Shown piece after piece: positions 2,824 through 60,468 of a DNA stretch of 64,000 nt. The notes beneath the pieces were generated by a model. The model made no database searches. It was given only the letters and a program-made list of their open reading frames with translations, and was not told where the DNA came from. Made by a program: the position numbers and the translations under genes. The stretch covers positions 62,001-126,000 of IMG/VR virus record IMGVR_UViG_3300028666_000022; one strand, given 5' to 3'. How positions within the stretch are numbered: position 1 is the stretch's first letter; the number at the start of each line of letters is the position of its first letter.

Positions 2824-3058
2824 AGAGTATGAAAATAATTAAATTTTCTTTATTGATCTTATGTCAATCGGCTGTACTCCTACAACCTCTACCTTATCTT
2901 ACCTAAGTATTTTAAGGTTACATTTATTAGCTATTATTTTTGATTCAATACTTTCGTATTGTCTTGCTAATTTGTTATTAACTTTTATGATTTTACATTA
3001 CCAAAGTATTAATTTAGGTAATAACCACAATATATCAAAGAACGTAAAGATAAATACT
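2824..3058 (-). ncRNA. Stand-alone TnpB omegaRNA-like cassette A (promoter, boxA-like element, structured leader, scaffold; guide read from 2823 downward)
   Basis: Minus strand encodes a TnpB C-terminal-like remnant (VEVVGVQPIDIRSIKKI*). Hairpins ACCTTA/TAAGGT, GGTTGT/ACAGCC and ATTGA/TCAAT plus pseudoknot GGAGTA/TACTCT parallel the tnpB 3' end at 4082-4187. Segment 2978-3058 is identical (81 bp) to 35945-36025. Confidence 0.7.
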
Positions 3059-3185
3059 GGAAATTATGAAAAAAGTAAATAAAAAGAAGCAGAATTTATT
3101 GCCAATATTAGAGCTGCAATACAAAATGAATTAGGCGAGGATGAGTTTAACATATTAATAAAACATAATTTAAAATATTAATACT

Positions 3186-3892
3186 ATGACACAACAAGAA
3201 CTAGATGTTTTAAAAACTTACTTATCTTATGATGAAATCAAAGAGATATGTATTGAAGAATGCAGAAGATTAGTAAGAGAAGGTGTGAATAGTATCAAAC
3301 CAGATAAAAGAATTGACAATTATGAAAGAATTATTTCAAATGCTGTTCACTACTATCTTGAAACTGAAATAGATCAAATACTTGATGTTAATACAAAAGA
3401 ATTAATCAAATCAAATGTATTAAATATTTTAACAAAACCAGAATTTACAAAATATTCTATTTTTAGAACTAAAAATTCTTGGGATAATGAGGATTCTATT
3501 GGAACTAAATATCTTAAAGAAGCAGTTACAGAAAATAAAAATTATATAAAAGAAAAAGTTAAATCCGTAATTGAAGAAATTGATTTTAATAATCTTAAAG
3601 AAGATATTAAAGAATATATTCTTGAAGTTATTGATGAAAAATTTAGTAAATCACTAAAATAAACAACATTATGATTGGTATTGAATTTACATTTAATGAT
3701 GGAACAAAGGACAATTATGATCCCATTAATTTTCCTGATGATTTCGAAGAAACTAATAAAGAATATATTTTACATATGGTGTATGATTATGTAATTGAGA
3801 AATCAATAGTAAAAAGTATTCGACATTATGAATTATGCCCTATTTGTGGTCATGAATTGTATGAAGACGGTTGTCACAATTATCATGAATAA
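3186..3892 (+). CDS. Two hypothetical proteins (3186..3662; 3671..3892 with CxxC)
   Basis: ORF track. Confidence 0.6.
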
Positions 3893-4081
3893 AAAATTTT
3901 TCTAATTTATGTGGTTTATTTAAATAGTTTTAATATATTTACAAAATTTATTTTAACCTAAATAATAGAAAGGAAATTTGTGATGGAAGAAAATATTTGG
4001 AGTGAACTAAGATACGAAGAAACTGCTGAAAATATTGTTAATATTTTTGCTTGACTAACAGGTGAACTCGATGAAATTGGA
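3885..4081 (+). repeat. Diverged ~200-bp direct duplication flanking the IS607-like element (partner 6165-6359)
   Basis: The same intergenic region (atgaataaaa...tttaatatatttacaaaa...aatagaaaggaaa) and gene 5' end occur on both sides. Confidence 0.8.
3983..4081 (+). pseudogene. Truncated 5' copy of ORF 6261..6479, ending at the TnpB element right end
   Basis: MEENIWSELRYEETAENIVNIFA*LTGELDEIG vs MDENIWSELRYEETGENIINIFGWLTGELDETG; TGA at 4052-4054. Confidence 0.9.
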
Positions 4082-4190
4082 ACAGTACAAAATAATATAA
4101 TAATATTACTTCTTTATGATCGAAACCATTGGCGATACTGCAATCACCTCTATCCCATTATCAAACTCGATGTTTGGAATTGCTTTTCTT
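4082..4190 (-). ncRNA. omegaRNA scaffold overlapping the tnpB 3' end; predicted guide TCCAATTTCATCGAGTTCAC
   Basis: Hairpins ATTCCA/TGGGAT, GGTGAT/ATCGCC and ATGGT-TTCG-ATCAT; loop GCAGTA can pair with terminal TACTGT. Confidence 0.7.
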
Positions 4191-5440
4191 AATATATTTA
4201 AACTCCCGTTTAAATCTGCATTTATCAATTTCTTTGATTTTGATCTATATAAACCCCTATAAATTCTTCTACCACTAAATTTATGTTTATTAATATCATT
4301 GTCTTCAATACCAATATTATTATTTTCACATTTTTTATCTTTCTTTTTATACACTGGTATCTCATCTTCATCTATAAAACTAGCCTTACTCGTATAACTT
4401 TCTTCCTGTATTAAGACATTTATACCAAGTAATTTAGCCTTATATTCTAACATCCATATAAACCTACTGTGTGGTATGCCTACAAATTTTTGATTACTCT
4501 CCTTGCCCATATTTATCTCTTGCTTCCACTCCTTATTATTACCAATTATTAAGGTATTAATATTGTTGTCAACTAAATGATTAATAATATATCGACTTGC
4601 TTTATGCAAATAATCATCAACTTTGTTATTCCTTTTATTTGTTAAATTCTTAATTCTATTGCTTGTCCCATATTGTTGTTTTTCTCCTTTCTTATTTATA
4701 TAATGATTTAAATCTGATTTGTAATGAGCTAAATTTTTATTATAATATTGATTAATACTTTTTAATGGTTTACCATTAATAATTATTGATTTAATTACAT
4801 TACTACCTATTGTTGCTAAATTATTTAAACCCAAATCAATACTAGCATACCTATTATTATTTGGCTTTAACTCAACTTCTTTTACTTCATATAATACTTC
4901 AATTACATAATGATTACCTTTTGGTATTACTCTACATTGCTTAATATTTTTAGAATTTATTTTAGTTTTAACCCTAATATTAGTTCTCGATAATTTAACT
5001 ATATTATTTTTTAATTCTTTTTTCGATATAGCATCTAATGTATAAATCAACATAAATCTACCATTTATCTTATCTTTATAATTGGGTAATTCAGGCTTAC
5101 CTTTATATTTAGATTTATTTTTATTATAATCCTTAATAGAAGCAAAGAAAGATTTCCAATTTTTATCTAATTGCATTAGGGTTTGATTTGATATTTTTCT
5201 AGGTAATTGTATATAATCAATATCATTAGAATCAATCATTAATCTATTAATATCATAATAATTTAAATAATTAGCATGATCAACTAAACCTAATTTTTTC
5301 TCATTACTTGTTTTAATAAATTCTTGTCTGATTATATAATTAGCTTTATTGTAAAGGTTTTTACTAAGAAAACATAGTTTATCAATTTCAATAAAATATT
5401 GATTAGATTTTTTAATTATATGTTTTTCTGTTAAAATCAC
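4106..5440 (-). CDS. tnpB: RNA-guided endonuclease TnpB (IS607-associated; rearranged RuvC-II type)
   Basis: SIDLGLNNL (RuvC-I); IIGNN with downstream QEESYTSK; INADLNGSLNI (RuvC-III). Confidence 0.92.
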   Translation of the reverse strand: MILTEKHIIKKSNQYFIEIDKLCFLSKNLYNKANYIIRQEFIKTSNEKKLGLVDHANYLNYYDINRLMIDSNDIDYIQLPRKISNQTLMQLDKNWKSFFASIKDYNKNKSKYKGKPELPNYKDKINGRFMLIYTLDAISKKELKNNIVKLSRTNIRVKTKINSKNIKQCRVIPKGNHYVIEVLYEVKEVELKPNNNRYASIDLGLNNLATIGSNVIKSIIINGKPLKSINQYYNKNLAHYKSDLNHYINKKGEKQQYGTSNRIKNLTNKRNNKVDDYLHKASRYIINHLVDNNINTLIIGNNKEWKQEINMGKESNQKFVGIPHSRFIWMLEYKAKLLGINVLIQEESYTSKASFIDEDEIPVYKKKDKKCENNNIGIEDNDINKHKFSGRRIYRGLYRSKSKKLINADLNGSLNILRKAIPNIEFDNGIEVIAVSPMVSIIKK

Positions 5441-5479
5441 TTTAAATTATTAATGTTATTAAATTATATTTTACTTATT

Positions 5480-6058
5480 TTAGTTTTCAATGAATTGTTT
5501 TATTTCTTCCTTATTCTTCTTTCTCCTTAAGCCATATATCCTTTCTGAAAATGAATAAAATATACTAATTAAATCATTTAGTAAATCTTCTTTATCTTCA
5601 TTTACTTGATTTATTACTAATATTTGTTTTCCTTTTAACTTAAGTAATAATTCAATATAATTAAAACCAAATCTTGTTAATCTATCTTTATTTTCAACAA
5701 TAATCATATTCCAATCATCTCTAACCAATATTTTATTTAATTTAGGACGATTATCATTCATACCTGAAGCAATTTCTTTAATTTCATCAATAATGATATA
5801 CGCATTTTTTGTTGCAAAATCACGTATTCTATTTAATTGATTATCCAATTCTAATTTCTTGTCATTATTAGAAACTCTAGCATATAAAATTACATTGGTT
5901 TGATTATTAATTTCAGGAAATAAGGGTATTTTAACATGGTTGGTTTCATCTAAGAAAGCACCTTTAATTTTACCAGCAACAAATCTATTCCAAGCTGTTT
6001 TATAAGTAACTGAATTTTCTCTTGCATATTCGGATAATTTTTTATATATTTGTTTCAT
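5480..6058 (-). CDS. tnpA: IS607 transposase (HTH + serine recombinase)
   Basis: N-terminal HTH, ILYARVS, EIASG, VENKDRLTRFGF, FSERIYGLR. Confidence 0.92.
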   Translation of the reverse strand: MKQIYKKLSEYARENSVTYKTAWNRFVAGKIKGAFLDETNHVKIPLFPEINNQTNVILYARVSNNDKKLELDNQLNRIRDFATKNAYIIIDEIKEIASGMNDNRPKLNKILVRDDWNMIIVENKDRLTRFGFNYIELLLKLKGKQILVINQVNEDKEDLLNDLISIFYSFSERIYGLRRKKNKEEIKQFIEN

Positions 6059-6260
6059 GAATAAAATGTTTTATATTTGTATATATAAATACTATTAATG
6101 TAGAAAAAGTTTATATAAATTTCAATAATTTTACATATTAATTATAATTAGTTTAAAATATGTAATGAATAAAATTTATAATTAATGTGTTTTAATTTAA
6201 AAATTTTTAATATATTTACAAAAATTATTTTAATTTAAACAATAGAAAGGAAAGTGAGTC

Positions 6261-6479
6261 ATGGATGAGAATATTTGGTCAGAATTACGTTATGAAGAAA
6301 CTGGTGAAAATATTATTAATATTTTTGGTTGGTTAACAGGCGAACTAGATGAAACAGGAATTGCTATTATTGAAATCAATGTTTTAACTGGTTTTGTAAC
6401 TTATCTTGATGAAAGAGCTAAAGACGATTTATACGCTCAGGAAGCAGTTCAAGAAGTTTTTGATATTTACGGTTTATAA
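6261..6479 (+). CDS. Hypothetical protein (intact copy of the gene truncated at 3983-4081)
   Basis: ORF track; paralog alignment. Confidence 0.8.
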   Translation: MDENIWSELRYEETGENIINIFGWLTGELDETGIAIIEINVLTGFVTYLDERAKDDLYAQEAVQEVFDIYGL

Positions 6480-6676: not shown

Positions 6677-7030
6677 ATGAAATCCCTTACTCAAGAAATT
6701 CTTAATGAATTTGTTCTTGATTTAAAGAAGAATCGATTCAAAGATATTATCAAAGATCTTAAAATAGATTTGTCTTCTAATGAAGACAATACAGAATACA
6801 TTTATCTAGGTTTAATCATTCTTAGGAAAAAAGAAAGACATAAGGGATATGGTTCATTAATCATGAAAGAAATTATATCTTTAGCAAACGAATATAATCT
6901 TCCAATTAAGTTATACTCAACAGCAGCTTATGGTTCAAAGATTGATAAACTAAATGAATTTTATAATAAACATGGTTTTGTTTTAGATAATTTAATGTTG
7001 TGTTATTTTCCAAAAATTGTAACAAAATAA
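6677..7030 (+). CDS. GNAT-family acetyltransferase
   Basis: RHKGYGS motif A; FYNKHGF motif. Confidence 0.75.
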   Translation: MKSLTQEILNEFVLDLKKNRFKDIIKDLKIDLSSNEDNTEYIYLGLIILRKKERHKGYGSLIMKEIISLANEYNLPIKLYSTAAYGSKIDKLNEFYNKHGFVLDNLMLCYFPKIVTK

Positions 7031-10351: not shown

Positions 10352-10570
10352 ATGAAAAAGAAGTTTAATAAAATTATGGAAGATTTAAAAAATAAAAATC
10401 TAATTGTTGTTCGAGTTAATAAAATAGAATTTGAATTAGATAATGGAGATATTTATCCTATCCCATTCGAATTAGATGTTGATGAAAATATTACTCTCGA
10501 AGAATTTCAAAAAATATTAAATGATTCAAAAGATGATATTATAAAAATACTTGATAAATATAATGAGTAA
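10352..10570 (+). CDS. Small protein upstream of tnpA, inside the element
   Basis: ORF overlapping the tnpA start. Confidence 0.6.
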   Translation: MKKKFNKIMEDLKNKNLIVVRVNKIEFELDNGDIYPIPFELDVDENITLEEFQKILNDSKDDIIKILDKYNE

Positions 10571-11189
10571 ACTATTATCATTACAAAAAGTATCAGAAAT
10601 ATTGGGTGTAACTAAGAAAACATTAAGAATATGGGATAATGATGGTAAATTAGTTAGTATTAAAACTATTGGTGGTCATAGAAGATATAAAGAAGATGAT
10701 GTTAATAAATACATCGGTGAATATGTTGAAGTTAATATTAATAATGTTTTAACATATAGTAGAGTAAGTAGTCATGAACAAAAAACCAAAGGAGATTTAG
10801 ATAGACAATCACAAAGAATAAGTGAATATTGTGCTAAGAAAAAATACAAAGTAGAATATATTATTAAAGATGTTGGTTCAGGACTATCAGATACAAGAAG
10901 TGGATTTGTTAAAATGGTTGATTTGGTAATTAAGAGAAAAATTAATAAAGTAATCATTGAAAATAAAGATAGATTAACCAGATTTCAATTTAATTTAATT
11001 AAAGTATTTTTTAATAGTTATGATGTGGAAATTGAATGTATTGAAAATACGAATATATCAAATGAAGAAGAATTTGTAAATGATATAATGATGTTAATGG
11101 CAAGTTTTTCTGGTAAATTATATGGTAAGAGAAGTGTGAAACGTAAAAAAGAATTAAAAGAACAAAAATTAAAAGATAAAAATTTTTAA
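10551..11189 (+). CDS. tnpA: IS607 transposase (MerR-like HTH + serine recombinase)
   Basis: LGVTKKTLRIWD...GGHRRY, YSRVSS, DVGSGL, ENKDRLTRF, SFSGKLYG. Confidence 0.93.
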   Translation: MINIMSKLLSLQKVSEILGVTKKTLRIWDNDGKLVSIKTIGGHRRYKEDDVNKYIGEYVEVNINNVLTYSRVSSHEQKTKGDLDRQSQRISEYCAKKKYKVEYIIKDVGSGLSDTRSGFVKMVDLVIKRKINKVIIENKDRLTRFQFNLIKVFFNSYDVEIECIENTNISNEEEFVNDIMMLMASFSGKLYGKRSVKRKKELKEQKLKDKNF

Positions 11190-11205
11190 AACGATACTAA
11201 TTATT

Positions 11206-12003
11206 ATGAAATTAATTCAGAAATATTTAAAAACCGATGATGAGATTGAATTATTAAGAGAGAGTAATTTATTAGTATCAAAAACACTTGCAGAAATTGC
11301 TAAAAATATAAAAGTTGGCGTTTCTACACTTTATCTTGATAAAATTGCTGAAGAGTTTATTATGGATAATAATGCAATACCTGCTTTTAAAGGATATAAT
11401 GGATTTCCAAATACATTATGTACATCAGTAAATGATGAAATAATTCATGGAATTCCATCTGATTATATTTTGAATGAAGGTGATATAATATCGGTTGATT
11501 GTGGTGTGATATTAAATGGATGGTATGGAGATAGTGCTTATACGTTTCCTGTTGGTAAAATTTCAAAGGAAATACTGCAATTATTGGTATATACTAAAGA
11601 ATCTCTTAAAGAAGGAATAAAAAAAGCAATCATAGGAAATAGAATTGGTGATATTTCTTATGCAGTTCAAACTAAAGTAGAAAGTGGTGGATATAGTGTT
11701 GTAAGAGAAATGGTTGGTCACGGTATTGGAAGAAATCTTCATGAAGAACCTAATATTCCAAATTATGGTAAGCAAGGAACGGGAATAAAACTTGAAAAGG
11801 GACTTGTAATATGTATTGAACCAATGATAAATCTTGGAAAAAGAGAAATGTTGTTAATGAAGGATGGATGGACAATAAAAACTGCTGATGGAAAACCTTC
11901 AGCACATTTCGAAAAAGCAATTGTGATTCACAAAGAAAAAGCAGATATATTAACAAATTTTGATTTTATTGAAAAAATTTTAGATAATAATGAAAATAAT
12001 TAG
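11206..12003 (+). CDS. map: Type I methionine aminopeptidase
   Basis: CTSVNDEIIHGIP, SVDCG, GDSAYT, GHGIG..HEEP, CIEPM, SAHFE. Confidence 0.95.
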   Translation: MKLIQKYLKTDDEIELLRESNLLVSKTLAEIAKNIKVGVSTLYLDKIAEEFIMDNNAIPAFKGYNGFPNTLCTSVNDEIIHGIPSDYILNEGDIISVDCGVILNGWYGDSAYTFPVGKISKEILQLLVYTKESLKEGIKKAIIGNRIGDISYAVQTKVESGGYSVVREMVGHGIGRNLHEEPNIPNYGKQGTGIKLEKGLVICIEPMINLGKREMLLMKDGWTIKTADGKPSAHFEKAIVIHKEKADILTNFDFIEKILDNNENN

Positions 12004-13126
12004 GTCAACTAAATGTAGTTTGAAGTTTTCTACTAAAAAGAAAATAAATGATTTGTCAACTATATTAGCAGAATATGCTAAAGTGGTTAATATTTTCATA
12101 AATTATTTTTGGTTAAATCCTGACAATACAAATAAAAATAAATTATTAAAAGAAATAGTTGATTTACCTTCAGAAACATGGTTGAGTGCAAGATTAAGAA
12201 AAGTGGCAGCAAGAGAAGCGATTGATATGATAAATGCATCTAAATTAAGATGGAAAAATAAAGCAGTAATTCCTGTTCATAAAGGAAATAGGATGTATGT
12301 TAGTTGTACCATTGCTGACTTAGTTCCTACTAAAAACACTAATTATAAAACTGAAGAAAGTCTTAGATTCGATGCTTGGTTGCATATACAATCAATTGGA
12401 AATAAAATGATAATGGATTTACCAATTAAATATCATAAACATTTTAATAAGTATAATAATATAGGTAAAAGATTAAACTCATACATAATAACAAAGAATT
12501 ACGTTCAGTTTAGTTTTGAAATTAATACACAACCTAAGAAAGAAGGTAAGAAATGTATTGGTATAGATACTGGTATTAACGCACTTGCTAGTTTGAATAA
12601 TGGTAATCAATATGGAAAAGATATTAAGGAATGTATTGAAAGAGTAAAAAGATGTCAACAAAAATCAAAAGGATGGTATGTTGCTAAAAGAGCATTAAAA
12701 CAGCGTATTGATGAAGTAGTAAAAGAATTAATGATAAAAGAGAATCCTGATTTAATAGTTGTGGAACGACTAAAGAATATGGGAGTTAAATCAAAAGCCA
12801 AACGTTTATTGGCTAAAAATATTAGACGTTCTATTGGAACATGGAACTGGAAGTATTGGTTAAAAAGGTTAGAAGGATATTGCGAAATTAACCGTGTTAG
12901 TTTTCGTTCGGTATTACCTTATTATACCAGTACAACTTGTCCTGTATGTGGTCATTCTGATAGGGGAAACCGAAATGGAAAGATATTCTTATGTCTTAAA
13001 TGTGAACACAAAGACAATGCTGATATAAATGCAGGAAAGAATATTTTAAATCGGTTTCTTATGGGACTCTACGGTGTCCATTACAAAGAATGTGAAGATG
13101 TACAATTTTGTGCAACTTTAGTTTAA
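11990..13126 (+). CDS. tnpB: RNA-guided endonuclease TnpB
   Basis: GIDTG, VVERL, TSTTCPVC...CLKC zinc ribbon, NADINAGKNI. Confidence 0.9.
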   Translation: MKIIRSTKCSLKFSTKKKINDLSTILAEYAKVVNIFINYFWLNPDNTNKNKLLKEIVDLPSETWLSARLRKVAAREAIDMINASKLRWKNKAVIPVHKGNRMYVSCTIADLVPTKNTNYKTEESLRFDAWLHIQSIGNKMIMDLPIKYHKHFNKYNNIGKRLNSYIITKNYVQFSFEINTQPKKEGKKCIGIDTGINALASLNNGNQYGKDIKECIERVKRCQQKSKGWYVAKRALKQRIDEVVKELMIKENPDLIVVERLKNMGVKSKAKRLLAKNIRRSIGTWNWKYWLKRLEGYCEINRVSFRSVLPYYTSTTCPVCGHSDRGNRNGKIFLCLKCEHKDNADINAGKNILNRFLMGLYGVHYKECEDVQFCATLV

Positions 13127-14275: not shown

Positions 14276-15777
14276 TGACATCCGAAGAAATAAAAAAAAT
14301 AATGATTGATGGTGGTTATGAATTACATAGTCATTCTGGTGATGATAAATTATTTACTTTTATAAAACATTTTAATAATAGAGGACAACATGAGCCAGAT
14401 GTTTTAAAATCAACGCATTTTATTTATTGTGAAGTTAATACTTCTAATGAATTTAGATTTACTGCAATTACAAATAGAATGTCATATTTTTTAGATTCTG
14501 GTTGGATGGGTTCTGTTGATAATGATCAACATTTCGTAACTAACGAATGTAATTTTGCTTATTATGCACGACTGATTCAAATTAATAATCCGTTTTAAAA
14601 TATATCATTAAATAAACATACTTTATATATTTTATTATTCACAGCAATTTAAAACTTAAAAAACATGGTAGCAGAGGACAGACTAACAACAGAATTTAAC
14701 TTACCTACACACGAGAATGAAATTTTTAAAGCAGAAGAGGTGCTTGAAAAGATTAGAACCAAATTTTATAAGGTTCAGTTATTAAAGAGTATTGATAATG
14801 AAACACACGAAAAACTGTATGAAGAAGCAATGAGAGTATTATATTATGTTGGCAGTTTATCAATGCCAGCATTTAATATTAGAGAAGAATTAGAAACAAA
14901 ATATACATTATTATACATAAAATCACCACAATTAGGAAAGAAGTTATTTTTAGATGATTATGAAAAGATACATTATAATTATAATATCTTAAAAGCAAGA
15001 TGCTATAGATTGCTCGATGATATTGATAAAGAATTCTTTAAAAGACACAAGAAAAGGCCAAGGAATTGGTAATAAAATATATTATTAGCATCTGTATTAT
15101 CGGATGCTTAAATTTTCTAATAATTTAAAATCATTTAATTATGAGTTATGATATTTACGGAAATAATTTAGCTCGTGGTCATTGCGAGGTTCATCCTTGG
15201 GTTGGTGAAGAATACCCTTGTTCATTATGTTATGAAGAAAACGATAAACATAATAAACAAAATAAGATATATAATCAACAAGAAAAAGATTATTACGATG
15301 CAATGGAACGAGAACATTATGATGAAATAATTAAGAAAAATTATTTTAAATATAGAATATTATGTTTCATTGTATTAATTTTACAGAATTCATTAAATCG
15401 ATTGAAAATCAAATTAGAAATGATTTATCAAAAAGAAAAACGAAAATATTAACATCATGATCCTCAAAAATAATAAAATTTTCGAGTCAATCTCTTCTGA
15501 ATTGGCTCTATTTTTAGTAAATAAAACACGTTATAAGATTTACTACGTTTTTCATTTAAATGATAATCAGCCAATGATTCTACTAACAAAAGAAAACATT
15601 GATAAATATACTGAATTACATGATGATGCTATAAATAGAAGAGTTGCTGACAATGGAATATTTCAATGTTTAGGAGAACTACCAACTTTAGTAATTAAAA
15701 CATTTTCGAATAATAAATATCCGATGCAAATCGAAAGTTTTTATGATGATTATCAGTGGCTTAATTGGTCTGAATAA
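14272..15777 (+). CDS. Hypothetical proteins (14272..14598, 14665..15072, 15141..15452, 15457..15777)
   Basis: ORF track. Confidence 0.6.
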
Positions 15778-16055
15778 TGAATATTAATTTAATTCCAATT
15801 ATATTAAAAGATCTAAGAAAACTATATCTTCTTGATAAGAAAATATTTAATAAGAATGATTACTATTCTTTAGATATTTGGAGAGATGTTTTAGATGAAC
15901 ATTTAAACGACATATTTTATGTTAAATATAATACTCAAATTGTTGGTACAATAATATCTTATGTTCTTGATGTTTATTATATAGATTCAATTGGTATTTT
16001 ATCTGAGTTTAGAAACAAAGGCATTTGTGAACTACCAAATAAATCGGCTTCTTAA
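15777..16055 (+). pseudogene. 3'-truncated RimI-like GNAT acetyltransferase, interrupted at 16027 by the tnpB right end
   Basis: Paralogous to 17454..17897 up to FRNKGIC, then reads into element sequence (ELPNKSAS*). Confidence 0.88.
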
Positions 16056-16150
16056 CTAATGTTAAGAATTTTAAACGTTTCATAGATTGTGCCTATTGTT
16101 ATAGGTCTTATTTTATCTCCACGTCTGTTATCGTTAGTCCCTAACGATTG
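16027..16150 (-). ncRNA. IS200/IS605-type omegaRNA and right end; predicted guide AAATGCCTTTGTTTCTAAAC
   Basis: Ends GGTAGTTCAC; hairpins ATCGTTAG/CTAACGAT, CCTAT/ATAGG and TTCTTAAC/GTTAAGAA; GTGGA/TTCAC pseudoknot. Confidence 0.75.
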
Positions 16151-17354
16151 TAATATTATCTTTGGTATTAATAGTTTGATTTTCATTAATTAAATCATTA
16201 TTAATACCACTCTCTTTTACTTTTCTTCCTTCTTTTAAAATATTTAAGGCTGCATTTAGATCCCTGTCATGTTTCATCCCACATTTAGGACAAATCCACT
16301 CTCTTACCTTAAGAGTCAAGTTCTGGTTAATATACCCACATTCATTACATGCCTTACTTGAAGGATAAAAACGGTTTATTTTAGTGATAGTTTTATCACT
16401 CCAATTAGCTTTATATTCAAGCATGTTAATGAATTTGCCCCATGAGGCATCTGATATTGACTTATTTAATCCTGACTTAGCTGACTGACCATTAGGTAGG
16501 TATTTACCATTATCATCCTGTTTTGGTTTACAAGATTTTAACATACCTTTAATATTCAAGTCTTCTAAATAAATTTGATCATATTTTTTTATTAAATCTG
16601 TACTGATCTTATGTAAATTATCTACACGAGAATTGGTTATCTTCTTATGTATTCTCGCTACCTTTAATCTTTGTTTTTCATATCTATTACTTCCTTTAGT
16701 TTTTCTACTTAAATGTTGCTGTCCCCTTTTTAGCTTTTTCGCATATGTCTTTGTATATTTATTGTTTTTATATTTATAACCATCTGATGTAATAATTAGA
16801 TCCTTAATTCCCAAATCAATACCAACCTCTTTACCAGTTTTAGGTAACTTAACATGAGATGTTTCAACCAAAATAGAAACAAAATATTCATTAGTTGGTG
16901 TTTTAGAAACAGTGCATTGATGTATTTCACCTTTAAATTTTCTGTCAATTATAATTGGTATTCCTTCTTTAAATTTAGGTATATGTAATTTATTTTTTAT
17001 TAACTTTGTAAATTGTGGCACACAAAAACTATTTCTATCATGCTTACTCTTAAATCTTGGAAACCTTGTTCTTCCCTTAAAGAAACCATTATAAGCTCCA
17101 TCTAAACATTTAAGAGATTGTTGCATGGATTGAGAATTAGTTTCATTTAACCAAGTAAAATCATTATTTTGTTTTAGTGTGGTGAGAGATTTACAATTAT
17201 CAACATAACTTAAACCTTGTTTATTTGTTTTGTATTCTTCAATCCTTTCGTTTAAATAATAGTTATAAACAAACCTAATACACCCAAAATGTTTATTTAA
17301 TAAGATCATTTGGTTATTATCAGGTTTTAGTTTATATTTGTAAGCTTTTAACAT
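16134..17354 (-). CDS. tnpB: RNA-guided endonuclease TnpB (IS200/IS605 OrfB type), no adjacent transposase
   Basis: MLKAYKYKL..HFGCIRFVYN, GIDLG, YLEDL, PSSKACNEC...WICPKC, HDRDLNAA. Confidence 0.95.
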   Translation of the reverse strand: MLKAYKYKLKPDNNQMILLNKHFGCIRFVYNYYLNERIEEYKTNKQGLSYVDNCKSLTTLKQNNDFTWLNETNSQSMQQSLKCLDGAYNGFFKGRTRFPRFKSKHDRNSFCVPQFTKLIKNKLHIPKFKEGIPIIIDRKFKGEIHQCTVSKTPTNEYFVSILVETSHVKLPKTGKEVGIDLGIKDLIITSDGYKYKNNKYTKTYAKKLKRGQQHLSRKTKGSNRYEKQRLKVARIHKKITNSRVDNLHKISTDLIKKYDQIYLEDLNIKGMLKSCKPKQDDNGKYLPNGQSAKSGLNKSISDASWGKFINMLEYKANWSDKTITKINRFYPSSKACNECGYINQNLTLKVREWICPKCGMKHDRDLNAALNILKEGRKVKESGINNDLINENQTINTKDNITIVRD

Positions 17355-17453
17355 TTATTCTATTCTGTTACTTTAGAATAAATACTAAAATATTTTAAAA
17401 AAGTCAAGAATGTTTAATTTATTTTAATTATATTTGTAGTAAATGATTATATT

Positions 17454-17897
17454 ATGAACATTAATTTACTTCCAATTACTTCTAAAAATCTCTTTAATGT
17501 AACACTCATTGAAGATCATTTATTTGATGTGAATGAACGTTATGATTTAGAAACATTTAAATCAATATTAATTGATTATCCAAACAATATATTTTTCATT
17601 AAATTAGATAATATAGTTGGTATATTAATATCGTATGTTCTTGATGAGTATTACTATCTTGATTCAATTGGAATATTACCCGAATTTAGAAATAAGGGAA
17701 TGTGCAAACAATTATTTAACGATTATCTTATTCCAGAAGCTAAGAGATTATCTTGTGATGAAATTAGATTACACGTAAATAAAGATAATACTGCAGCAAT
17801 TGGATTATATATGAAATTAGGGTTTGAAACTATTGAAGTAATTGAGAATTATTATGGAGATAATAGAAATGGATATTATATGAAAAAGAAAATATAA
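17454..17897 (+). CDS. RimI-like GNAT N-acetyltransferase (intact copy)
   Basis: PEFRNKG; LHVNKDNTAAIGLYMKLGF..IENYY; preceded by TATATTTG at 17429-17436. Confidence 0.88.
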   Translation: MNINLLPITSKNLFNVTLIEDHLFDVNERYDLETFKSILIDYPNNIFFIKLDNIVGILISYVLDEYYYLDSIGILPEFRNKGMCKQLFNDYLIPEAKRLSCDEIRLHVNKDNTAAIGLYMKLGFETIEVIENYYGDNRNGYYMKKKI

Positions 17898-24505: not shown

Positions 24506-25988
24506 TTTTTGAAGTTAATACAGTTGCTGAAATACTTGGTCTTGTTAAACTAACATATTTTAATTGATTACGTTCTTTAACTAACCAATTATCATTCATA
24601 TCAGTTTCTAATACCATTACATGTGAATATGTGCTTCCCTGTGCTTTATGTGCTGTTATACAATAACCATAATCTAAATCCTTAACAATAACATCACTAT
24701 TATCGCGATGCGTTCCGTTTCGATGTTTATTTATTGTTATCATAATTAAATTATTACGCCTAAATTCATAATATTGAGGCCATAATTTCTTATTTGATTT
24801 TCCAAGATCTCTATAATAGTCATGCTTTTCCGCATATTTATGTAAATTATCATGATCATTTGAATCTACAACAAATACATCTTCATAATTAAATAATCCT
24901 TGACCTAAACTTTCTTTTAATTTAACTCTAAATCCTTTAATATTATATTTATTTTCTTCAAGATTTGATTTATATATTACATTATAGTCTGCAGAATTTT
25001 CAATAATATTACGTCTATTATTATTTGTAGTAATTGACCTATATCCCATAATAATATCATCCTTTTCAATAACATCCACATTATCACCAATTAATGCGGT
25101 TCTAATTATTTTATTACTTTGCATGACAGTAATATTTTTCCATGCAATTACTTTAATAAAATCACTATCGGTTTTAAATTCATTTGATTTAAATTTTTCA
25201 ATTATTTTATTTCTAAATTCTTCTTTGTTTATAGTAAAAATAACTCCTTCCCCCAAATTATTAACATTTGTTTTTCTTTCGAATCCGCCATCAATAACAT
25301 TTAAATTATTTCTAAGTGCATCATAAATAAATGCTAATGGATTTGTATCATTTTGCCTCTCTACTTTAGTTAATTGATGAAATTCATTTGTTTCTTGATT
25401 AAACACAACACTCTCCTTTTCTCCAACAGGAGGTATTTGAGCAGGATCACCCATGAAAAGTACTTTGGTTCGATTATTTTTTATTTTACTTAGTGTTAGC
25501 TTAATTAAATCATATAATGATTGATTTATCATACTTGCTTCATCAATAACACATATATTATAATCAGAAATTCTAGGTATTGCTATTGGATTAAATTGAG
25601 GTCGATTCGGATCAAACTGATCTAAATCAAGATCTGGTCTTAAACCAAGAAGAGCATGAAGTGTTTCGGCTTGTTTACCAGTTGTATTTTTAATGACTTT
25701 TTTTGCTTTATGAGTTGGAGCACTAACAACAATTCCACCATGATATTCATCTAATATTTTTTTAATACACGTACTTTTACCAGTTCCAGCATATCCTGAA
25801 AGGGTAAAAAACGTTTTATCACTTTTTAGCCATGTACGAATTTTATTAATTCCATCATATTGTTCATCATTAAATGTAATTAATTTACCATTAGGTAATA
25901 ATAGTTGATTATCAGGTAATTTATTATCCATTTCAAATAAAGATATTGTTTTAATTCTAGTGATATTTAATTTACTTTTTATTGCCAT
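24495..25988 (-). CDS. Dda/RecD-like SF1B DNA helicase
   Basis: GYAGTGKS, APTHKA, IDEASM, GDPAQIPPV, YCITAHKAQGSTY, YVSLTR. Confidence 0.92.
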   Translation of the reverse strand: MAIKSKLNITRIKTISLFEMDNKLPDNQLLLPNGKLITFNDEQYDGINKIRTWLKSDKTFFTLSGYAGTGKSTCIKKILDEYHGGIVVSAPTHKAKKVIKNTTGKQAETLHALLGLRPDLDLDQFDPNRPQFNPIAIPRISDYNICVIDEASMINQSLYDLIKLTLSKIKNNRTKVLFMGDPAQIPPVGEKESVVFNQETNEFHQLTKVERQNDTNPLAFIYDALRNNLNVIDGGFERKTNVNNLGEGVIFTINKEEFRNKIIEKFKSNEFKTDSDFIKVIAWKNITVMQSNKIIRTALIGDNVDVIEKDDIIMGYRSITTNNNRRNIIENSADYNVIYKSNLEENKYNIKGFRVKLKESLGQGLFNYEDVFVVDSNDHDNLHKYAEKHDYYRDLGKSNKKLWPQYYEFRRNNLIMITINKHRNGTHRDNSDVIVKDLDYGYCITAHKAQGSTYSHVMVLETDMNDNWLVKERNQLKYVSLTRPSISATVLTSKIDE

Positions 25989-35783: not shown

Positions 35784-36025
35784 ACAGTACGTAATAACAT
35801 ATAATTTATATTAACTCTTTATGGTCGAAACCATTGGCGATACTGCAATCACCTCTATTCCATTATCAAACCGATGTTTGGAATTGCTTTTATTAGCTAT
35901 TATTTTTAATTCAACATCTAAAAGATATTGTCTTGCTAAATTGTTTAACTTTTATGATTTTACATTACCAAAGTATTAATTTAGGTAATAACCACAATAT
36001 ATCAAAGAACGTAAAGATAAATACT
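35784..36025 (-). ncRNA. Stand-alone TnpB omegaRNA cassette B; predicted guide CCATGTGTGAGATTTATTTA
   Basis: 35816-35891 matches 4111-4187 (2 substitutions + 1 loop indel); same ACAGTAC end; leader shared with cassette A. Confidence 0.8.
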
Positions 36026-36074
36026 ATAAATTTTGAAAATTTTAAATAAATTTATATAAAAATTATAATAAGTT

Positions 36075-46206: not shown

Positions 46207-47124
46207 TCAATTATTTATATTACCACTTTTAATATGTCTATTAGTATATGAACAAAGTGGTTGAAGATTAGTATAATGATTTAATTTAATTATATCTTCT
46301 TCTGTTTTTGCTGTTGATAATGGTATGATATGATCAAGATCCCATGCAGTATTTATTTCTGTTGGATAACCATTCCAATTACCATAATTTGACCAATTCA
46401 TCCAAGGTTGAAATAATTTCTCAATATGATTTTTAAATTCTTCAAAACTACAATCTAAAATTGTTTCAGTTTTTGATGTTTTTGCATAACCCATTCTTTT
46501 TATTGATGTTGATATTAAAGATCTAATGGTAATTGTTAATTTATATTGTATGTCTTCTGATTTTCTTTTCTTTTTATATTCTTTATTATATAATTTTTTC
46601 TTTTCTTTATTTTTTAAATTATATTTTTTTGTGGTATTAATATATTTATTTCTATTCTCTTTAGTTTTTTTACTAATTTTCTCTTTATTATTAAAATAAT
46701 ATTCAGATCGTTGGTTTTTTATTTTTTCTTTGTTTTCTTCATGATATTCTTTCTGATATTCATCAATTTTCTCTTTATTTTTTTCGACATATTTTTTATT
46801 TTTTAAAATAATTTTTTCTTTATTGGTTTCATAATACTCTTTATTTTTTTCAACAATTTCGTCATGATGATCATTATAGCGTTTATTACTACGTTTTTTT
46901 ATTGTTTCTTTGTTTCCAACATAATACTTAGCTAATTTCTTTTTTAATTTTTCTTTGTTTTTTTGAGCATACTCTTTTTTATATTCTGATATTTTTTCTT
47001 TATTCTTCTCACAATATTCTTTATTATATTCTTTTCCTAGTTGTTTCAATTTTTCCTTATTCTTTTCACGATATTTTTTATTATATTCTTTATCGTATTG
47101 TGCTTTTTCTTCTTTTGATTTCAT
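46207..47124 (-). CDS. HNH-type homing endonuclease with Lys-rich repeats
   Basis: Repeated Y.EKNKEKI; WDLDHIIPL...NHYTNLQPL..N..K. Confidence 0.8.
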   Translation of the reverse strand: MKSKEEKAQYDKEYNKKYREKNKEKLKQLGKEYNKEYCEKNKEKISEYKKEYAQKNKEKLKKKLAKYYVGNKETIKKRSNKRYNDHHDEIVEKNKEYYETNKEKIILKNKKYVEKNKEKIDEYQKEYHEENKEKIKNQRSEYYFNNKEKISKKTKENRNKYINTTKKYNLKNKEKKKLYNKEYKKKRKSEDIQYKLTITIRSLISTSIKRMGYAKTSKTETILDCSFEEFKNHIEKLFQPWMNWSNYGNWNGYPTEINTAWDLDHIIPLSTAKTEEDIIKLNHYTNLQPLCSYTNRHIKSGNINN

Positions 47125-59181: not shown

Positions 59182-60468
59182 TCATAATATAATTATTTTT
59201 AATTCTTTTAATTTATTTTCTAAATACTCTTCAATATTTTTTACTTTATATGATATTCTAATTAATCTTATATTTTTCTTTTTACAATAATCATTTTTTA
59301 TTTTATCATTAGCTTGTCTTAATTTTAACCCTTTTTCTCCACCAAAAAAATTTATAGCCATAAAATGTTGTCTACCATCAAATTCAATTAATACGTTATA
59401 ATTATTAAGATAAAAATCAAATGATAATTTTTGTTTATTTTTACAATCGTCAAATTTTTTTTGTTGTTCAAAATTAAAATTATTTTTAGCTAAAAAATTT
59501 TTTATTGTTAACTCACCCCTAGAACTACTACAAATTGAACATCCATTACCACTTAAATGACTGTGTGGTGTTTGTAAAAATTCTCCATGAATAGGACAAA
59601 TAATTTTTAATTTTTTATTTGATGATATATATTCTGTTTTAGAATAATCATATTTATTATTATGTATAATATTTGCTTTTTCAATAAAAAAATTAATGTT
59701 TGTTTTTGATCCAGAACATAATGAACATCCATTAGTTCTTAAATGAGAATTTGGTATTTGTTCAAATATTCCATGAATCGGACATTTAATTTTTACTTTA
59801 ATATTTGCACTAATATAATTAGTTTCCGAATAATCATATTTATTATTATGAACAATATTTGCTTTGTTTATGAAAATTTCAGTGGTTTTTTTAATTTTAT
59901 CACTACATTTTGAACATCCATATCCAGTTAAATGACCAGATGGTAATTGTTCAAATATTCCATGAATTGGGCATTTAATTTTTACTTTGATGTTTGCACC
60001 AATATAATTTATCTCTGAATAATCAAATTTATTGTTATGAATAATATTTGCTTTTTTAATAAATTCACTAGTATTAGATTTTTCTGTACCACCACATTTT
60101 GGACATCCATCTCCTATTAAATGATCATTTGGTCTTTGAATAAACTCTCCGTGTGTTGGGCAAATAATTTTTACTTTAGTTTTATTTTGTTTATATTCAA
60201 CTAATGAATAATCATACTTATTTTTATGAATAATTTTTGCTTTTTCAATAAATTCATTAGAATTAGATTTTATATTACCCGCACATTTTGGACATCCTCT
60301 ACCATCTAAATGATCGTTTGGTGTTTGTTCAAAAACATCATGTTTTAAACAAATAATTTTAACTTTAGTAGAACTATTAACATAATTAACAAAAGTATAT
60401 TCATATTTATTTTTATGAATATACTTTGCTTTTTTTATAAACTCTTTTGTTGTTAATTTTTTACCCAT
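59182..60468 (-). CDS. Homing-endonuclease-like protein with five Zn-ribbon repeats and a C-terminal PD-(D/E)XK/Vsr-like domain
   Basis: 5x FI.KA..IH.NKYDYS...IC..HG.F.Q.P..HL.G.GC..C; FDFYL..IEFDGRQH..DKIK. Confidence 0.85.
   Translation of the reverse strand: MGKKLTTKEFIKKAKYIHKNKYEYTFVNYVNSSTKVKIICLKHDVFEQTPNDHLDGRGCPKCAGNIKSNSNEFIEKAKIIHKNKYDYSLVEYKQNKTKVKIICPTHGEFIQRPNDHLIGDGCPKCGGTEKSNTSEFIKKANIIHNNKFDYSEINYIGANIKVKIKCPIHGIFEQLPSGHLTGYGCSKCSDKIKKTTEIFINKANIVHNNKYDYSETNYISANIKVKIKCPIHGIFEQIPNSHLRTNGCSLCSGSKTNINFFIEKANIIHNNKYDYSKTEYISSNKKLKIICPIHGEFLQTPHSHLSGNGCSICSSSRGELTIKNFLAKNNFNFEQQKKFDDCKNKQKLSFDFYLNNYNVLIEFDGRQHFMAINFFGGEKGLKLRQANDKIKNDYCKKKNIRLIRISYKVKNIEEYLENKLKELKIIIL

What the first reader, a model, noticed from the sequence alone, without database searches (positions are those of the whole stretch)
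15777..17897. Same dead copy / TnpB / live copy layout with an unrelated TnpB family, locus 2
SEEN: the GNAT gene is cut at 16027 by an IS605-type right end, and an intact diverged GNAT with its own TATATTTG promoter follows tnpB. The predicted guide (reverse complement of 16007-16026) covers the acetyl-CoA-binding FRNKG codons. It mismatches the resident copy (17684-17703) at guide positions 2, 5, 8, 11 and 20, all third codon positions. INFERENCE: two independent cases within about 14 kb suggest a recurring strategy: target a conserved motif in rival alleles while keeping a resistant copy.
Basis: partly seen in the sequence, partly recalled or inferred. Interest (0 to 1): 0.8.

Follow-up and report, generated by a model that had tools for sequence, protein, structure and literature searches.

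The report
TnpB element between broken and intact GNAT
A small RNA-guided nuclease element (TnpB) in a giant phage has split one acetyltransferase gene, and its guide RNA is built from the broken piece. A second, diverged copy of the gene next door is intact and cannot be cut, so the layout fits a selfish "homing" cassette, but no rival gene for it to cut has been found yet.

Summary
A GNAT gene is cut after codon 83 at 16026/16027 by the right end of a TnpA-less IS605-family tnpB element (16027 to about 17402-17453, minus strand). A complete GNAT, 50% identical, follows at 17454-17897.

- **Activity:** TnpB keeps its D-E-D catalytic residues, shows dN/dS 0.12 against its closest relative, and has a covarying omega-RNA scaffold.
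- **TAM:** seven relatives give TTTAT.
- **Intact copy:** it carries TTTGC at the TAM position and mismatches at guide positions 2, 5, 8, 11 and 20.

The "strategy" reading is only partly supported. Third-position mismatches are what old divergence predicts (enrichment p = 0.058). No matching allele or empty site turned up in any collection or in four samples.

Two results from relatives bear on it:
- The sister element L002 carries a 17-nt guide that matches related phages' neighbouring gene next to TTTAT. Its own allele has lost the TAM.
- The same broken/element/intact layout recurs in L023 with the element in the other orientation, so the guide there is not from the broken copy. It also recurs at the window's IS607 locus.

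Recombination, not guide design, therefore probably builds the layout.

The parts
15777..16026 (+). Dead GNAT: codons 1-83 (plus 1 nt) of an A-type GNAT acetyltransferase. Its ATG overlaps the stop of the upstream ORF (15457..15777). The frame runs on into the element to a stop at 16053-16055.
   Evidence: The frame is open over 84 codons, although 32% random divergence would leave it open in only about 1% of simulations.
16007..16026 (-). Guide-encoding flank of the omega-RNA: AAATGCCTTTGTTTCTAAAC (first 16 nt = 16011-16026). It is antisense to codons 77-83 (EFRNKGI, motif A).
   Evidence: Right-end boundary. The roughly 16-nt guide taken from the right-end flank is established for ISDra2 TnpB (PMC8612924). 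No other TAM-flanked match exists in the window.
16027..16148 (-). Right end / omega-RNA scaffold, ending ...TTGGTAGTTCAC. Its 5' hairpin is at 16130-16148 and it overlaps the tnpB stop.
   Evidence: 85% identical to L002. There are compensatory changes in both hairpins against L002. In the family alignment, 11 of 16 predicted pairs show double-sided changes.
16134..17354 (-). tnpB, 406 aa, RuvC D-E-D and CxxC...CxxC intact. A roughly 67-nt insertion (about 16153-16219) relative to L002 replaces the last ~30 residues. ORF 16052..16186 (-) is the vestigial old tail.
   Evidence: Pfam. Full-length alignment to ISDra2 TnpB 8EXA/8BF8, E 4e-73. 75% aa identity to L002 with dN/dS 0.12. Insertion seen.
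17355..17402 (-). Inner left end / tnpB upstream region shared with L002.
   Evidence: blastn 81% over 99 nt including the tnpB start; alignment.
17403..17453 (.). Either outer left end or native upstream region of the live GNAT (undecided). It contains TATATTTG (17429-17436, + strand) and abuts the live ATG, so the minus strand reads TTCAT next to this stretch.
   Evidence: Not significantly similar to the L002 outer left end (score 17 vs null median 16). No significant hairpin (z -0.7, against -5.3 and -3.0 for L013 and L008). Promoter status not verified.
17454..17897 (+). Live GNAT, 147 aa, complete acetyltransferase domain.
   Evidence: Pfam PF00583 E 1.9e-14; PHROG acetyltransferase families.
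17684..17708 (-). Near-cognate site in the live copy: ACATTCCCTTATTTCTAAAT (rc of 17684-17703), preceded at the TAM position by TTTGC (rc of 17704-17708).
   Evidence: Family TAM TTTAT.

Best explanation
Locus 2 is a TnpA-less (IS1341-type) IS200/IS605-family tnpB/omega-RNA element that is probably still an active RNA-guided nuclease. Its right-end junction looks like an ordinary insertion into an A-type GNAT gene next to a TAM-like pentanucleotide. Its hard-wired guide is therefore the antisense of codons 77-83 of that gene. The expected activity is the known TnpB one. In a cell that also holds a relative with an uninterrupted A-type GNAT (TTTAY followed by the guide match), the nuclease cuts that gene, and recombinational repair from this genome copies the element in (homing). 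Here the cassette also carries a complete, 50%-diverged GNAT that cannot be cut (TTTGC at the TAM position; mismatches at guide positions 2, 5, 8, 11, 20). The carrier, and any converted genome, therefore keeps acetyltransferase function. The layout 5' fragment / element / complete copy was most likely built by recombination between long-diverged functional genes. One route is a crossover inside the element between genomes that carry it at two neighbouring sites. Another is carry-over of right-end flank DNA when the element moved, as seen in L002. It was not built by in-situ duplication, nor by selection of synonymous escape changes. Shown: anatomy, guide, conservation of protein and RNA, family TAM, untargetability of the live copy at sequence level, and the L002 and L023 parallels. 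Inferred: nuclease activity, existence of A-type targets, homing, and the route of origin.
For: - Right end and guide defined by 13 elements.
- Omega-RNA covariation.
- TnpB aligns end to end with ISDra2 TnpB with D-E-D kept and shows dN/dS 0.12 against L002.
- TAM TTTAT at the left-end flanks of L002, L007, L008, L009, L013, L020 and L023, and before every L002 target.
- The right-end junction falls at a position where the live homologue has one of only 3 TTT[AG][CT] sites in 440 positions. With Cys-Lys kept, the A allele would read TTTAC followed by the guide.
- The dead copy has an open frame (p about 0.01 under neutral drift), and pN < pS. The two copies are therefore old functional genes and the truncation is recent.
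- L002: a 17-nt guide does not match its own insertion site but matches 5 relatives' neighbouring gene perfectly next to TTTAT. None of 29 other guides gave such hits. Its own allele has TTTGT plus 2 further changes, and 3 of 5-8 lineage-specific substitutions fall in the 22-nt TAM+target (p 0.007-0.009).
- The layout recurs at locus 1 and in L023.
- In all three cases the 3' remainder of the broken gene is absent (for this locus), as recombination models predict.
Against: - No A-type allele, empty site or related phage was found in IMG/VR, 5.8 billion proteins, 1.84 billion representatives by exhaustive HMMER or JGI metagenomes.
- Contigs from four rhizosphere samples all carry the same junctions, with no variant joint.
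- The outer left end and its hairpin are not recognisable, and no Y1 TnpA lies in the window. The element may therefore be stranded.
- The TnpB C-terminal tail is replaced after a 67-nt insertion.
- The predicted target TAM would be TTTAC (if Cys is conserved), not the consensus TTTAT, and its acceptance is unknown.
- The two GNATs are each other's only detectable relatives, which also fits old tandem paralogues within one lineage.
Confidence: 0.5

Rival explanations
1. Neutral by-product. The phage had two old tandem GNAT paralogues. The element inserted into the first because a backup copy made that insertion tolerable. The 3' remainder and outer left end were later deleted. The guide is just the ordinary flank and has no extant target, so nothing is being 'targeted'.
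For: The two GNATs are each other's only relatives among 1.84 billion representatives. No rival allele or empty site was found anywhere. The outer left end is not recognisable, as a left-end-adjacent deletion would predict. The third-position mismatch pattern is expected from divergence.
Against: It needs clean loss of exactly the 3' remainder in three independent loci: this one, locus 1 and L023. In L023 both junctions look canonical, with TTTAT at the left end. TnpB is under strong purifying selection, which implies a function that needs targets. L002 shows real rival-allele targeting in this clade.
Confidence: 0.25
2. The cassette is maintained as an allele-killing device, and the live copy has been selected for synonymous changes under the guide so that it resists while rivals are cut at an unchangeable motif.
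For: There is an excess of synonymous differences under the guide (4 of 6 identical-aa codons against 9 of 37 elsewhere, p = 0.058). The guide sits on motif A. In L002, lineage-specific changes cluster in TAM+target.
Against: The excess is marginal and post hoc. The unusual G/C-ending codons (GAG, AAC, GGC in a 25% GC genome) are in the dead copy, not the live one. In L023 the guide is not taken from the dead copy at all. The 50% aa divergence long predates the truncation.
Confidence: 0.15
3. Decaying relic. TnpB or its RNA no longer works and the locus is a fossil of a past insertion.
For: The C-terminal tail is replaced after a 67-nt insertion. There is no TnpA in the window and no left-end hairpin.
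Against: The 406-aa ORF is intact in an AT-rich genome. The catalytic triad and zinc ribbon are kept, dN/dS is 0.12, and the scaffold is 85% conserved with compensatory changes. The sequence is identical in four samples.
Confidence: 0.07
4. TldR-like regulator. The RNP binds the near-cognate site in the live GNAT, or the dead fragment, and tunes expression without cutting.
For: Phage TnpB derivatives that repress a host gene while the phage supplies its own homologue are known (TldR/fliC; PMC10705468, listed).
Against: The RuvC residues are intact, whereas TldRs have lost them (from the literature). The live site has no TAM and has seed mismatches.
Confidence: 0.03

Closest known systems
IS200/IS605-family TnpB/omega-RNA transposon homing (ISDra2; Karvelis 2021, PMC8612924; Meers 2023, bioRxiv 10.1101/2023.03.14.532601)
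   Same: Same protein family (E 4e-73 to ISDra2 TnpB, D-E-D kept). The omega-RNA is built from the tnpB 3' end plus the right end. The guide is the right-end flank. The TAM equals the pentanucleotide at the left-end flank. The expected role is cutting element-free sites so that recombination copies the element.
   Different: There is no TnpA in 64 kb, and the outer left end is not recognisable. The left-end flank is not the rest of the interrupted gene but a complete, diverged second copy. The likely target is a co-infecting relative's allele, not the sister chromatid after excision. TAM is TTTAT, not TTGAT.
Intronless homing by free-standing homing endonucleases of T-even phages (SegF and others; reviewed in PMC13565253)
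   Same: A nuclease gene between phage genes would cut a neighbouring gene in relatives. The donor's own allele is protected by sequence differences, and flanking DNA would be co-converted. L002 fits this closely: its target lies about 100 nt inside the adjacent gene, and the same intergenic spot holds a multi-HTH, HNH-like ORF in other relatives.
   Different: Recognition is by RNA guide plus TAM, not by protein. The guide has to be encoded as right-end flank DNA, so a piece of the target (250 nt here, 17 nt in L002) sits in the donor genome. No co-infection data exist.
TldR / fliC-P loci of prophages (TnpB-derived RNA-guided repressors; PMC10705468)
   Same: A TnpB-family protein whose guide addresses one copy of a gene while the phage carries its own homologue next to it. 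The guide is uncoupled from the element's own insertion site, as in L002.
   Different: TldR is nuclease-dead and represses a host gene. Here RuvC is intact and the presumed target is a rival phage allele.
Mobile endonuclease genes that bring a replacement piece of the gene they interrupt (for example the mitochondrial atp6 case in Allomyces; recalled from memory, not checked here)
   Same: A displaced dead fragment of the resident gene lies beside an endonuclease gene and a functional replacement copy.
   Different: In those cases a 3' segment is replaced and the nuclease is protein-guided. Here a whole gene follows the element and a 5' fragment is left behind.

Membership tests
IS200/IS605 family, TnpB-only (IS1341-type) element | TnpB with a split RuvC (D, E, D) and a zinc-ribbon TNB domain | tested here: met
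   Pfam PF12323, PF01385 and PF07282. Residues 3-385 align with ISDra2 TnpB 5-379, with the DLG, E and DRD motifs kept.
IS200/IS605 family, TnpB-only (IS1341-type) element | Structured omega-RNA scaffold that overlaps the tnpB 3' end and ends at a defined right end | tested here: met
   The conserved terminus GGTAGTTCAC is present in 13 loci, with divergence directly after it. 11 of 16 predicted pairs show compensatory changes. Expression was not tested.
IS200/IS605 family, TnpB-only (IS1341-type) element | Left end with a subterminal hairpin, abutting the TAM | tested here: inconclusive
   Only 17355-17402 matches L002. The outer part is not significantly similar and the fold gives z -0.7. 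The flank reads TTCAT, one mismatch from TTTAT.
IS200/IS605 family, TnpB-only (IS1341-type) element | Insertion 3' of a specific pentanucleotide, with the right-end flank being the sequence that followed it | tested here: inconclusive
   No empty site is available. Indirect support: the homologous position in the live copy has TTTGC, one of 3 TTT[AG][CT] sites in 440 positions.
Autonomous IS605 (with Y1 TnpA) | HUH/Y1 transposase gene in the element or nearby | tested here: not met
   tblastn with the TnpA of L007 finds nothing in the 64-kb window. The remaining 276 kb of the contig was not examined.
Intronless-homing endonuclease cassette | Cleavage site present in the neighbouring gene of nuclease-free relatives | not testable with these tools
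   No relatives of this phage exist in any collection. The feature is met at sequence level for sister element L002.
Intronless-homing endonuclease cassette | The donor's own allele is resistant through sequence differences | tested here: met
   At sequence level only: TTTGC at the TAM position and mismatches at positions 2, 5, 8, 11, 20. In L002: TTTGT plus 2 mismatches.
Intronless-homing endonuclease cassette | Preferential inheritance and co-conversion in mixed infection | not testable with these tools
   This needs an isolated phage and host.
TldR-type RNA-guided repressor | Loss of RuvC catalytic residues | tested here: not met
   All three catalytic residues are present.

The most novel reading that the evidence does not exclude
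In large virulent phages, TnpB elements have become TnpA-independent, RNA-guided 'intronless homing' cassettes. The guide is a carried-over piece of a rival allele (17 nt in L002, 250 nt here). A spare, untargetable copy of the target gene travels with the nuclease, so the cassette drives itself and its linked allele through mixed infections at no cost to the carrier. Carry-over of right-end flank DNA would be a natural route by which a TnpB guide becomes uncoupled from the element's own insertion site.
Probability: 0.3. Interest if true: 0.85.

Novelty: new variant of a known kind. Interest (0 to 1): 0.62.

Why it matters
TnpB is the ancestor of Cas12, and its known role is to restore a transposon at its own donor site. 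How a guide ever came to address something other than the element's own insertion site is an open question. L002 gives a natural example of that uncoupling: a carried-over 17-nt guide aimed at related phages' alleles. The window gives a larger version, linked to a spare gene copy.

If these loci work as inferred, RNA-guided nucleases take part in phage-against-phage competition and in building mosaic genomes, in the way protein homing endonucleases do in T4-like phages. A 2026 review (PMC13565253) raises this only as a theoretical possibility. The loci are small and directly testable by plasmid interference.

Tried and rejected
- **Right-end 14-mer scan.** A 14-mer from the right end was scanned against IMG/VR. 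It gave about 119 chance hits, and only L002 shares the right end.
- **First boundary estimate.** The two-sequence alignment placed the right-end boundary 2 nt off. The 13-locus alignment corrected it.
- **Guide match within each locus.** I tested whether guides of 24 family members have unusually good near-matches nearby. This is uninformative in AT-rich DNA, and even this window's guide/live match is not unusual as a bare 18-mer.
- **False leads from flank repeats.** The L013 hit lies at the end of a GIY-YIG gene and has no duplication. The L040 repeats are tRNA genes, and the L041 flanks are full-length paralogues with other genes between them.
- **Passenger-gene idea.** If the live GNAT were cargo with the true left end beyond it, an A-type 3' remainder should lie beyond 17897. 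None does, because the convergent denV-like gene starts 47 nt later.
- **In-situ duplication followed by drift.** Rejected by the open frame of the dead copy (p about 0.01) and by pN < pS.
- **Promoter claim.** No enrichment of TAnnTTTG or of sigma-70-like sites was found.
- **Relatives of the L023 phage.** Searches with its methyltransferase and its DNA polymerase found none.
- **Homologues of the upstream ORF.** None were found.
- **Rfam.** The only hit in the window is a tRNA.
Full report
**Source and setting.** The window is positions 62001-126000 of a 339,898-bp viral contig (IMGVR_UViG_3300028666_000022 = Ga0265336_10000007) from a rhizosphere metagenome, 25% GC. In 16 kb it holds three tnpB genes:
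- an IS607-type pair, tnpB 4106..5440 and serine recombinase 5480..6058, both on the minus strand;
- a block of recombinase, M24 peptidase and tnpB at 10551..13126;
- the tnpB of this finding.

**Anatomy of locus 2.**
- ORF 15777..16055 is the N-terminal 85 residues of a GNAT acetyltransferase followed by 7 unrelated residues. Its ATG overlaps the stop of the upstream ORF.
- It is 50% identical to the first 85 residues of the complete 147-aa GNAT at 17454..17897. At DNA level this is 68% over 15774-16027 vs 17451-17704.
- Nothing in the window resembles the missing C-terminal half.
- Between the two lies tnpB (16134..17354, minus strand), which has all three Pfam domains of IS605 OrfB.

**Right end, guide and RNA.** The nearest relative is L002 (IMGVR_UViG_3300044823_000099), with 75% aa identity. 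It shares the region downstream of tnpB, and both hairpins show compensatory changes.

Thirteen elements of the clade (40-75% aa identity) all end ...GGTAGTTCAC and are unrelated from the next base on. The consensus fold has double-sided changes in 11 of its 16 pairs. In the window the element therefore begins at 16027, and the flank that would be transcribed as the guide is rc(16007-16026), AAATGCCTTTGTTTCTAAAC. For ISDra2, a roughly 150-nt RNA ending in about 16 nt of flank is the established guide (PMC8612924).

**Is the nuclease likely to work?**
- TnpB aligns from residue 3 to 385 with ISDra2 TnpB (8EXA/8BF8, E 4e-73), and the three RuvC acidic residues and the zinc ribbon are conserved.
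- Against L002, dN/dS is 0.12 with dS 1.4.
- Caveat: a roughly 67-nt insertion (about 16153-16219) replaces the last ~30 residues, and the old tail survives as ORF 16052..16186.

**TAM.** TTTAT directly precedes the left ends of L002, L008 and L013, and of the TnpA-containing L007, L009 and L020. It also precedes the left end of L023 and every target of the L002 guide. I take TTTAT as the family TAM. This is an inference from seven insertion sites, not an assay.

**The live copy as a target.** At the homologous site the live GNAT has TTTGC at the TAM position and mismatches at guide positions 2, 5, 8, 11 and 20. All are third codon positions; four are synonymous and one is Ile/Met. It should not be cut.

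That pattern is, however, what two old, constrained genes would show:
- First and second codon positions are 74% identical and third positions 57%; pS is 0.47 and pN 0.28.
- The excess of synonymous differences under the guide is marginal: 4 of 6 identical-aa codons against 9 of 37 elsewhere, p = 0.058.
- The unusual G/C-ending codons are in the dead copy.

**What the dead copy is.**
- Its frame is open over 84 codons. With 32% random substitutions this happens in about 1% of simulations. So the two genes diverged while both were functional, and the truncation is recent. An in-situ duplication that then drifted is excluded.
- The junction lies where the live homologue has one of only three TTT[AG][CT] sites among 440 positions.
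- If the A allele kept Cys-Lys, its minus strand read TTTAC followed by the guide. The right-end junction therefore looks like an ordinary insertion.

**The left side.** Only 17355-17402 is recognisably shared with L002. The outer 51 nt are not and form no significant hairpin, unlike L013 and L008. The minus strand reads TTCAT (the live ATG) next to this stretch, one mismatch from the TAM. No Y1 transposase is in the window, although several relatives have one.

**Search for rival alleles.** None was found.

| Search | Result |
|---|---|
| Dead fragment vs 5.8 billion proteins | only itself and the live copy |
| Dead fragment vs 1.84 billion representatives, exhaustive HMMER | only itself and the live copy |
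| JGI metagenome scan | only the source contig and two weak, unrelated hits |
| Neighbours' homologues (denV-like gene; upstream ORF) | 50% identity at most; none |
| Logan contigs of four rhizosphere runs | cover both junctions without a single difference; no alternative joint |

The lineage is essentially unsampled, so this is absence of evidence.

**Sister element L002.** It sits between two structural genes, and L191 is an empty site with those genes 4 nt apart. The junctions reconstruct as an insertion 3' of TTTAT into ...ACACGTAAACT|ATAAAGTGGCG..., but the inserted unit is the element plus 17 extra nt after the right end (AATAAGACAAGAATTAC).

- **What the guide matches.** That 17-mer does not match the insertion site. 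It matches perfectly, on the other strand about 100 nt inside the upstream 270-aa gene, the alleles of L183, L185, L186, L187, L191 and L193, each time preceded by TTTAT. None of 29 other guides gave such hits in the same 200-locus set.
- **L002's own allele.** It reads TTTGT and has two further changes. Three of its 5-8 lineage-specific substitutions in the last 220-400 nt fall in this 22-nt stretch (p 0.007-0.009).
- **The same intergenic spot in other relatives.** It holds a 329-aa multi-HTH ORF with an HNH-like C-terminus (the motif judged by eye).

This is the geometry of intronless homing. It also shows that right-end flank DNA can be carried along, so that the guide stays aimed at an old target.

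**Recurrence of the layout.** A scan of 41 family loci for homology between the two flanks found the window and L023.

- **L023** (45% TnpB identity). A 60-aa N-terminal fragment of a DNA-methyltransferase-like gene ends in TTTAT at the left end. An Arc-like gene, tnpB and the right end follow. Then, 22 nt further on, comes a complete 194-aa copy, 52% identical over 42 aa. Here the element points the other way, so the guide comes from upstream of the live copy, not from the dead copy.
- **Window locus 1.** It shows the same layout around the IS607-type element: 3885-4082 vs 6165-6360, 82% identical. The repeat includes the upstream non-coding region. The dead copy has an in-frame TGA. The right-end boundary at 4078/4079 is fixed by a solo right-end copy at 35784-35895.

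**How the layout arises (inference).** In all three cases one junction looks canonical and the 3' remainder of the broken gene is missing. Three routes fit:
- (R) a crossover inside the element between two genomes that carry it at neighbouring sites, one inside the gene and one just upstream of the other genome's copy. This yields 5' fragment / element / complete gene whatever the orientation.
- (E*) excision at a pseudo right end, which carries flank DNA along as in L002. Here the 250-nt flank ends in ATTCAT, which resembles the right-end terminus.
- (C) integration of a circle that carries a gene fragment.

A tandem-paralogue-plus-deletion model (T) needs three clean, similar deletions. It cannot be excluded, because the two GNATs are each other's only relatives. 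I cannot choose among R, E* and C.

**Comparison with known systems and verdict.**
- **What it is.** By protein, RNA and right end, it is a member of the IS200/IS605 TnpB family. It is not an autonomous IS605, since no TnpA is present and the left end is doubtful.
- **What it works like.** It most resembles TnpB homing combined with phage intronless homing. A linked spare gene copy adds a TldR/fliC-like logic.
- **Literature.** Three full-text searches found no description of this layout. One review treats TnpB homing between co-infecting phages as a theoretical possibility.
- **Verdict.** The mechanism of homing against A-type alleles with an untargetable resident copy is plausible, at about 0.5. 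The claim that this is a selected strategy is unproven, and the L023 case weakens it in part.

Noticed in passing
window 3885-6479 (locus 1): The IS607-type element (tnpB 4106..5440, serine recombinase 5480..6058, minus strand) is flanked by about 200-nt direct repeats that are 82% identical (3885-4082 vs 6165-6360). They include the upstream non-coding region and about 32 codons of a 72-aa ORF. The left copy has an in-frame TGA where the live gene (6261..6479) has TGG. The guide would be rc(4059-4078), and it differs from the live copy at positions 1, 2, 10 and 16.
   Followed up: partly
window 35784-36050 and 2923-3083: A solo copy of the IS607 right end / tnpB 3' end (35784-35895, 89% to 4082-4191) is fused to a copy (35889-36050, 88%) of a non-coding-looking stretch at 2923-3083. 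It may be a miniature derivative or a second omega-RNA locus. It fixed the right-end boundary of locus 1.
   Followed up: partly
window 10551-13126: A third tnpB (11990..13126, + strand) follows a MerR-HTH serine recombinase (10551..11189) and an M24 methionine-aminopeptidase-like gene (11206..12003) with overlapping reading frames. This looks like an IS607-like unit with a peptidase passenger. No flanking duplication was seen.
   Followed up: no
L002/L182 (IMGVR_UViG_3300044823_000099), L182 1418-2860: The sister element carries a 17-nt right-end flank that does not match its own insertion site. It matches related phages' 270-aa structural gene next to TTTAT, and the element's own allele has TTTGT. 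This is a natural case of a TnpB guide uncoupled from its insertion site.
   Followed up: yes
L183-L186, L189, L190 (between the 270-aa and 310-aa genes), e.g. L184 4653-5642: The same intergenic spot that holds tnpB in L002 holds 0.7-1-kb inserts in other relatives. In L184 the insert is a 329-aa ORF with several HTH repeats and an HNH-like C-terminal motif. The spot appears to be a hot spot for selfish nuclease genes. L199 also shows a duplicated ATGGCAA start remnant there.
   Followed up: partly
L023 3547-5815 (IMGVR_UViG_3300025678_000046): The layout here is a dead 60-aa methyltransferase fragment ending in TTTAT, then an Arc-like RHH gene, tnpB and the right end, then a complete 194-aa methyltransferase. 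It is the same layout as in the window with the element in the opposite orientation. The break again lies just after a cofactor-binding GxG motif.
   Followed up: partly
window 16052-16219: Relative to L002, the window's tnpB has a roughly 67-nt insertion that shifts the frame and gives a new C-terminal tail. The ancestral tail survives as ORF 16052..16186 (-), which overlaps the omega-RNA scaffold.
   Followed up: partly
L007, L009, L012, L017, L020, L010/L011: These relatives carry a divergent Y1 (HUH) tnpA next to tnpB and have TTTAT at the outer boundary. They are complete IS605 elements in phage contigs and could mobilise TnpA-less copies in trans.
   Followed up: partly
window 6677-7030: A third, short GNAT-like ORF (117 aa; Pfam Acetyltransf_7 just under the cut-off) lies close to locus 1. 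It shows no detectable similarity to the two GNATs of locus 2.
   Followed up: no
window 59524-60447 and 46562-47082: These are tandemly repeated coding segments, with about 186-nt units at 70-75% identity, inside minus-strand ORFs.
   Followed up: no
window 25380-25395: This is the best other match to the 16-nt guide in the window (2 mismatches). It is preceded by TGATG, not a TAM, so it is not a likely self-target.
   Followed up: yes
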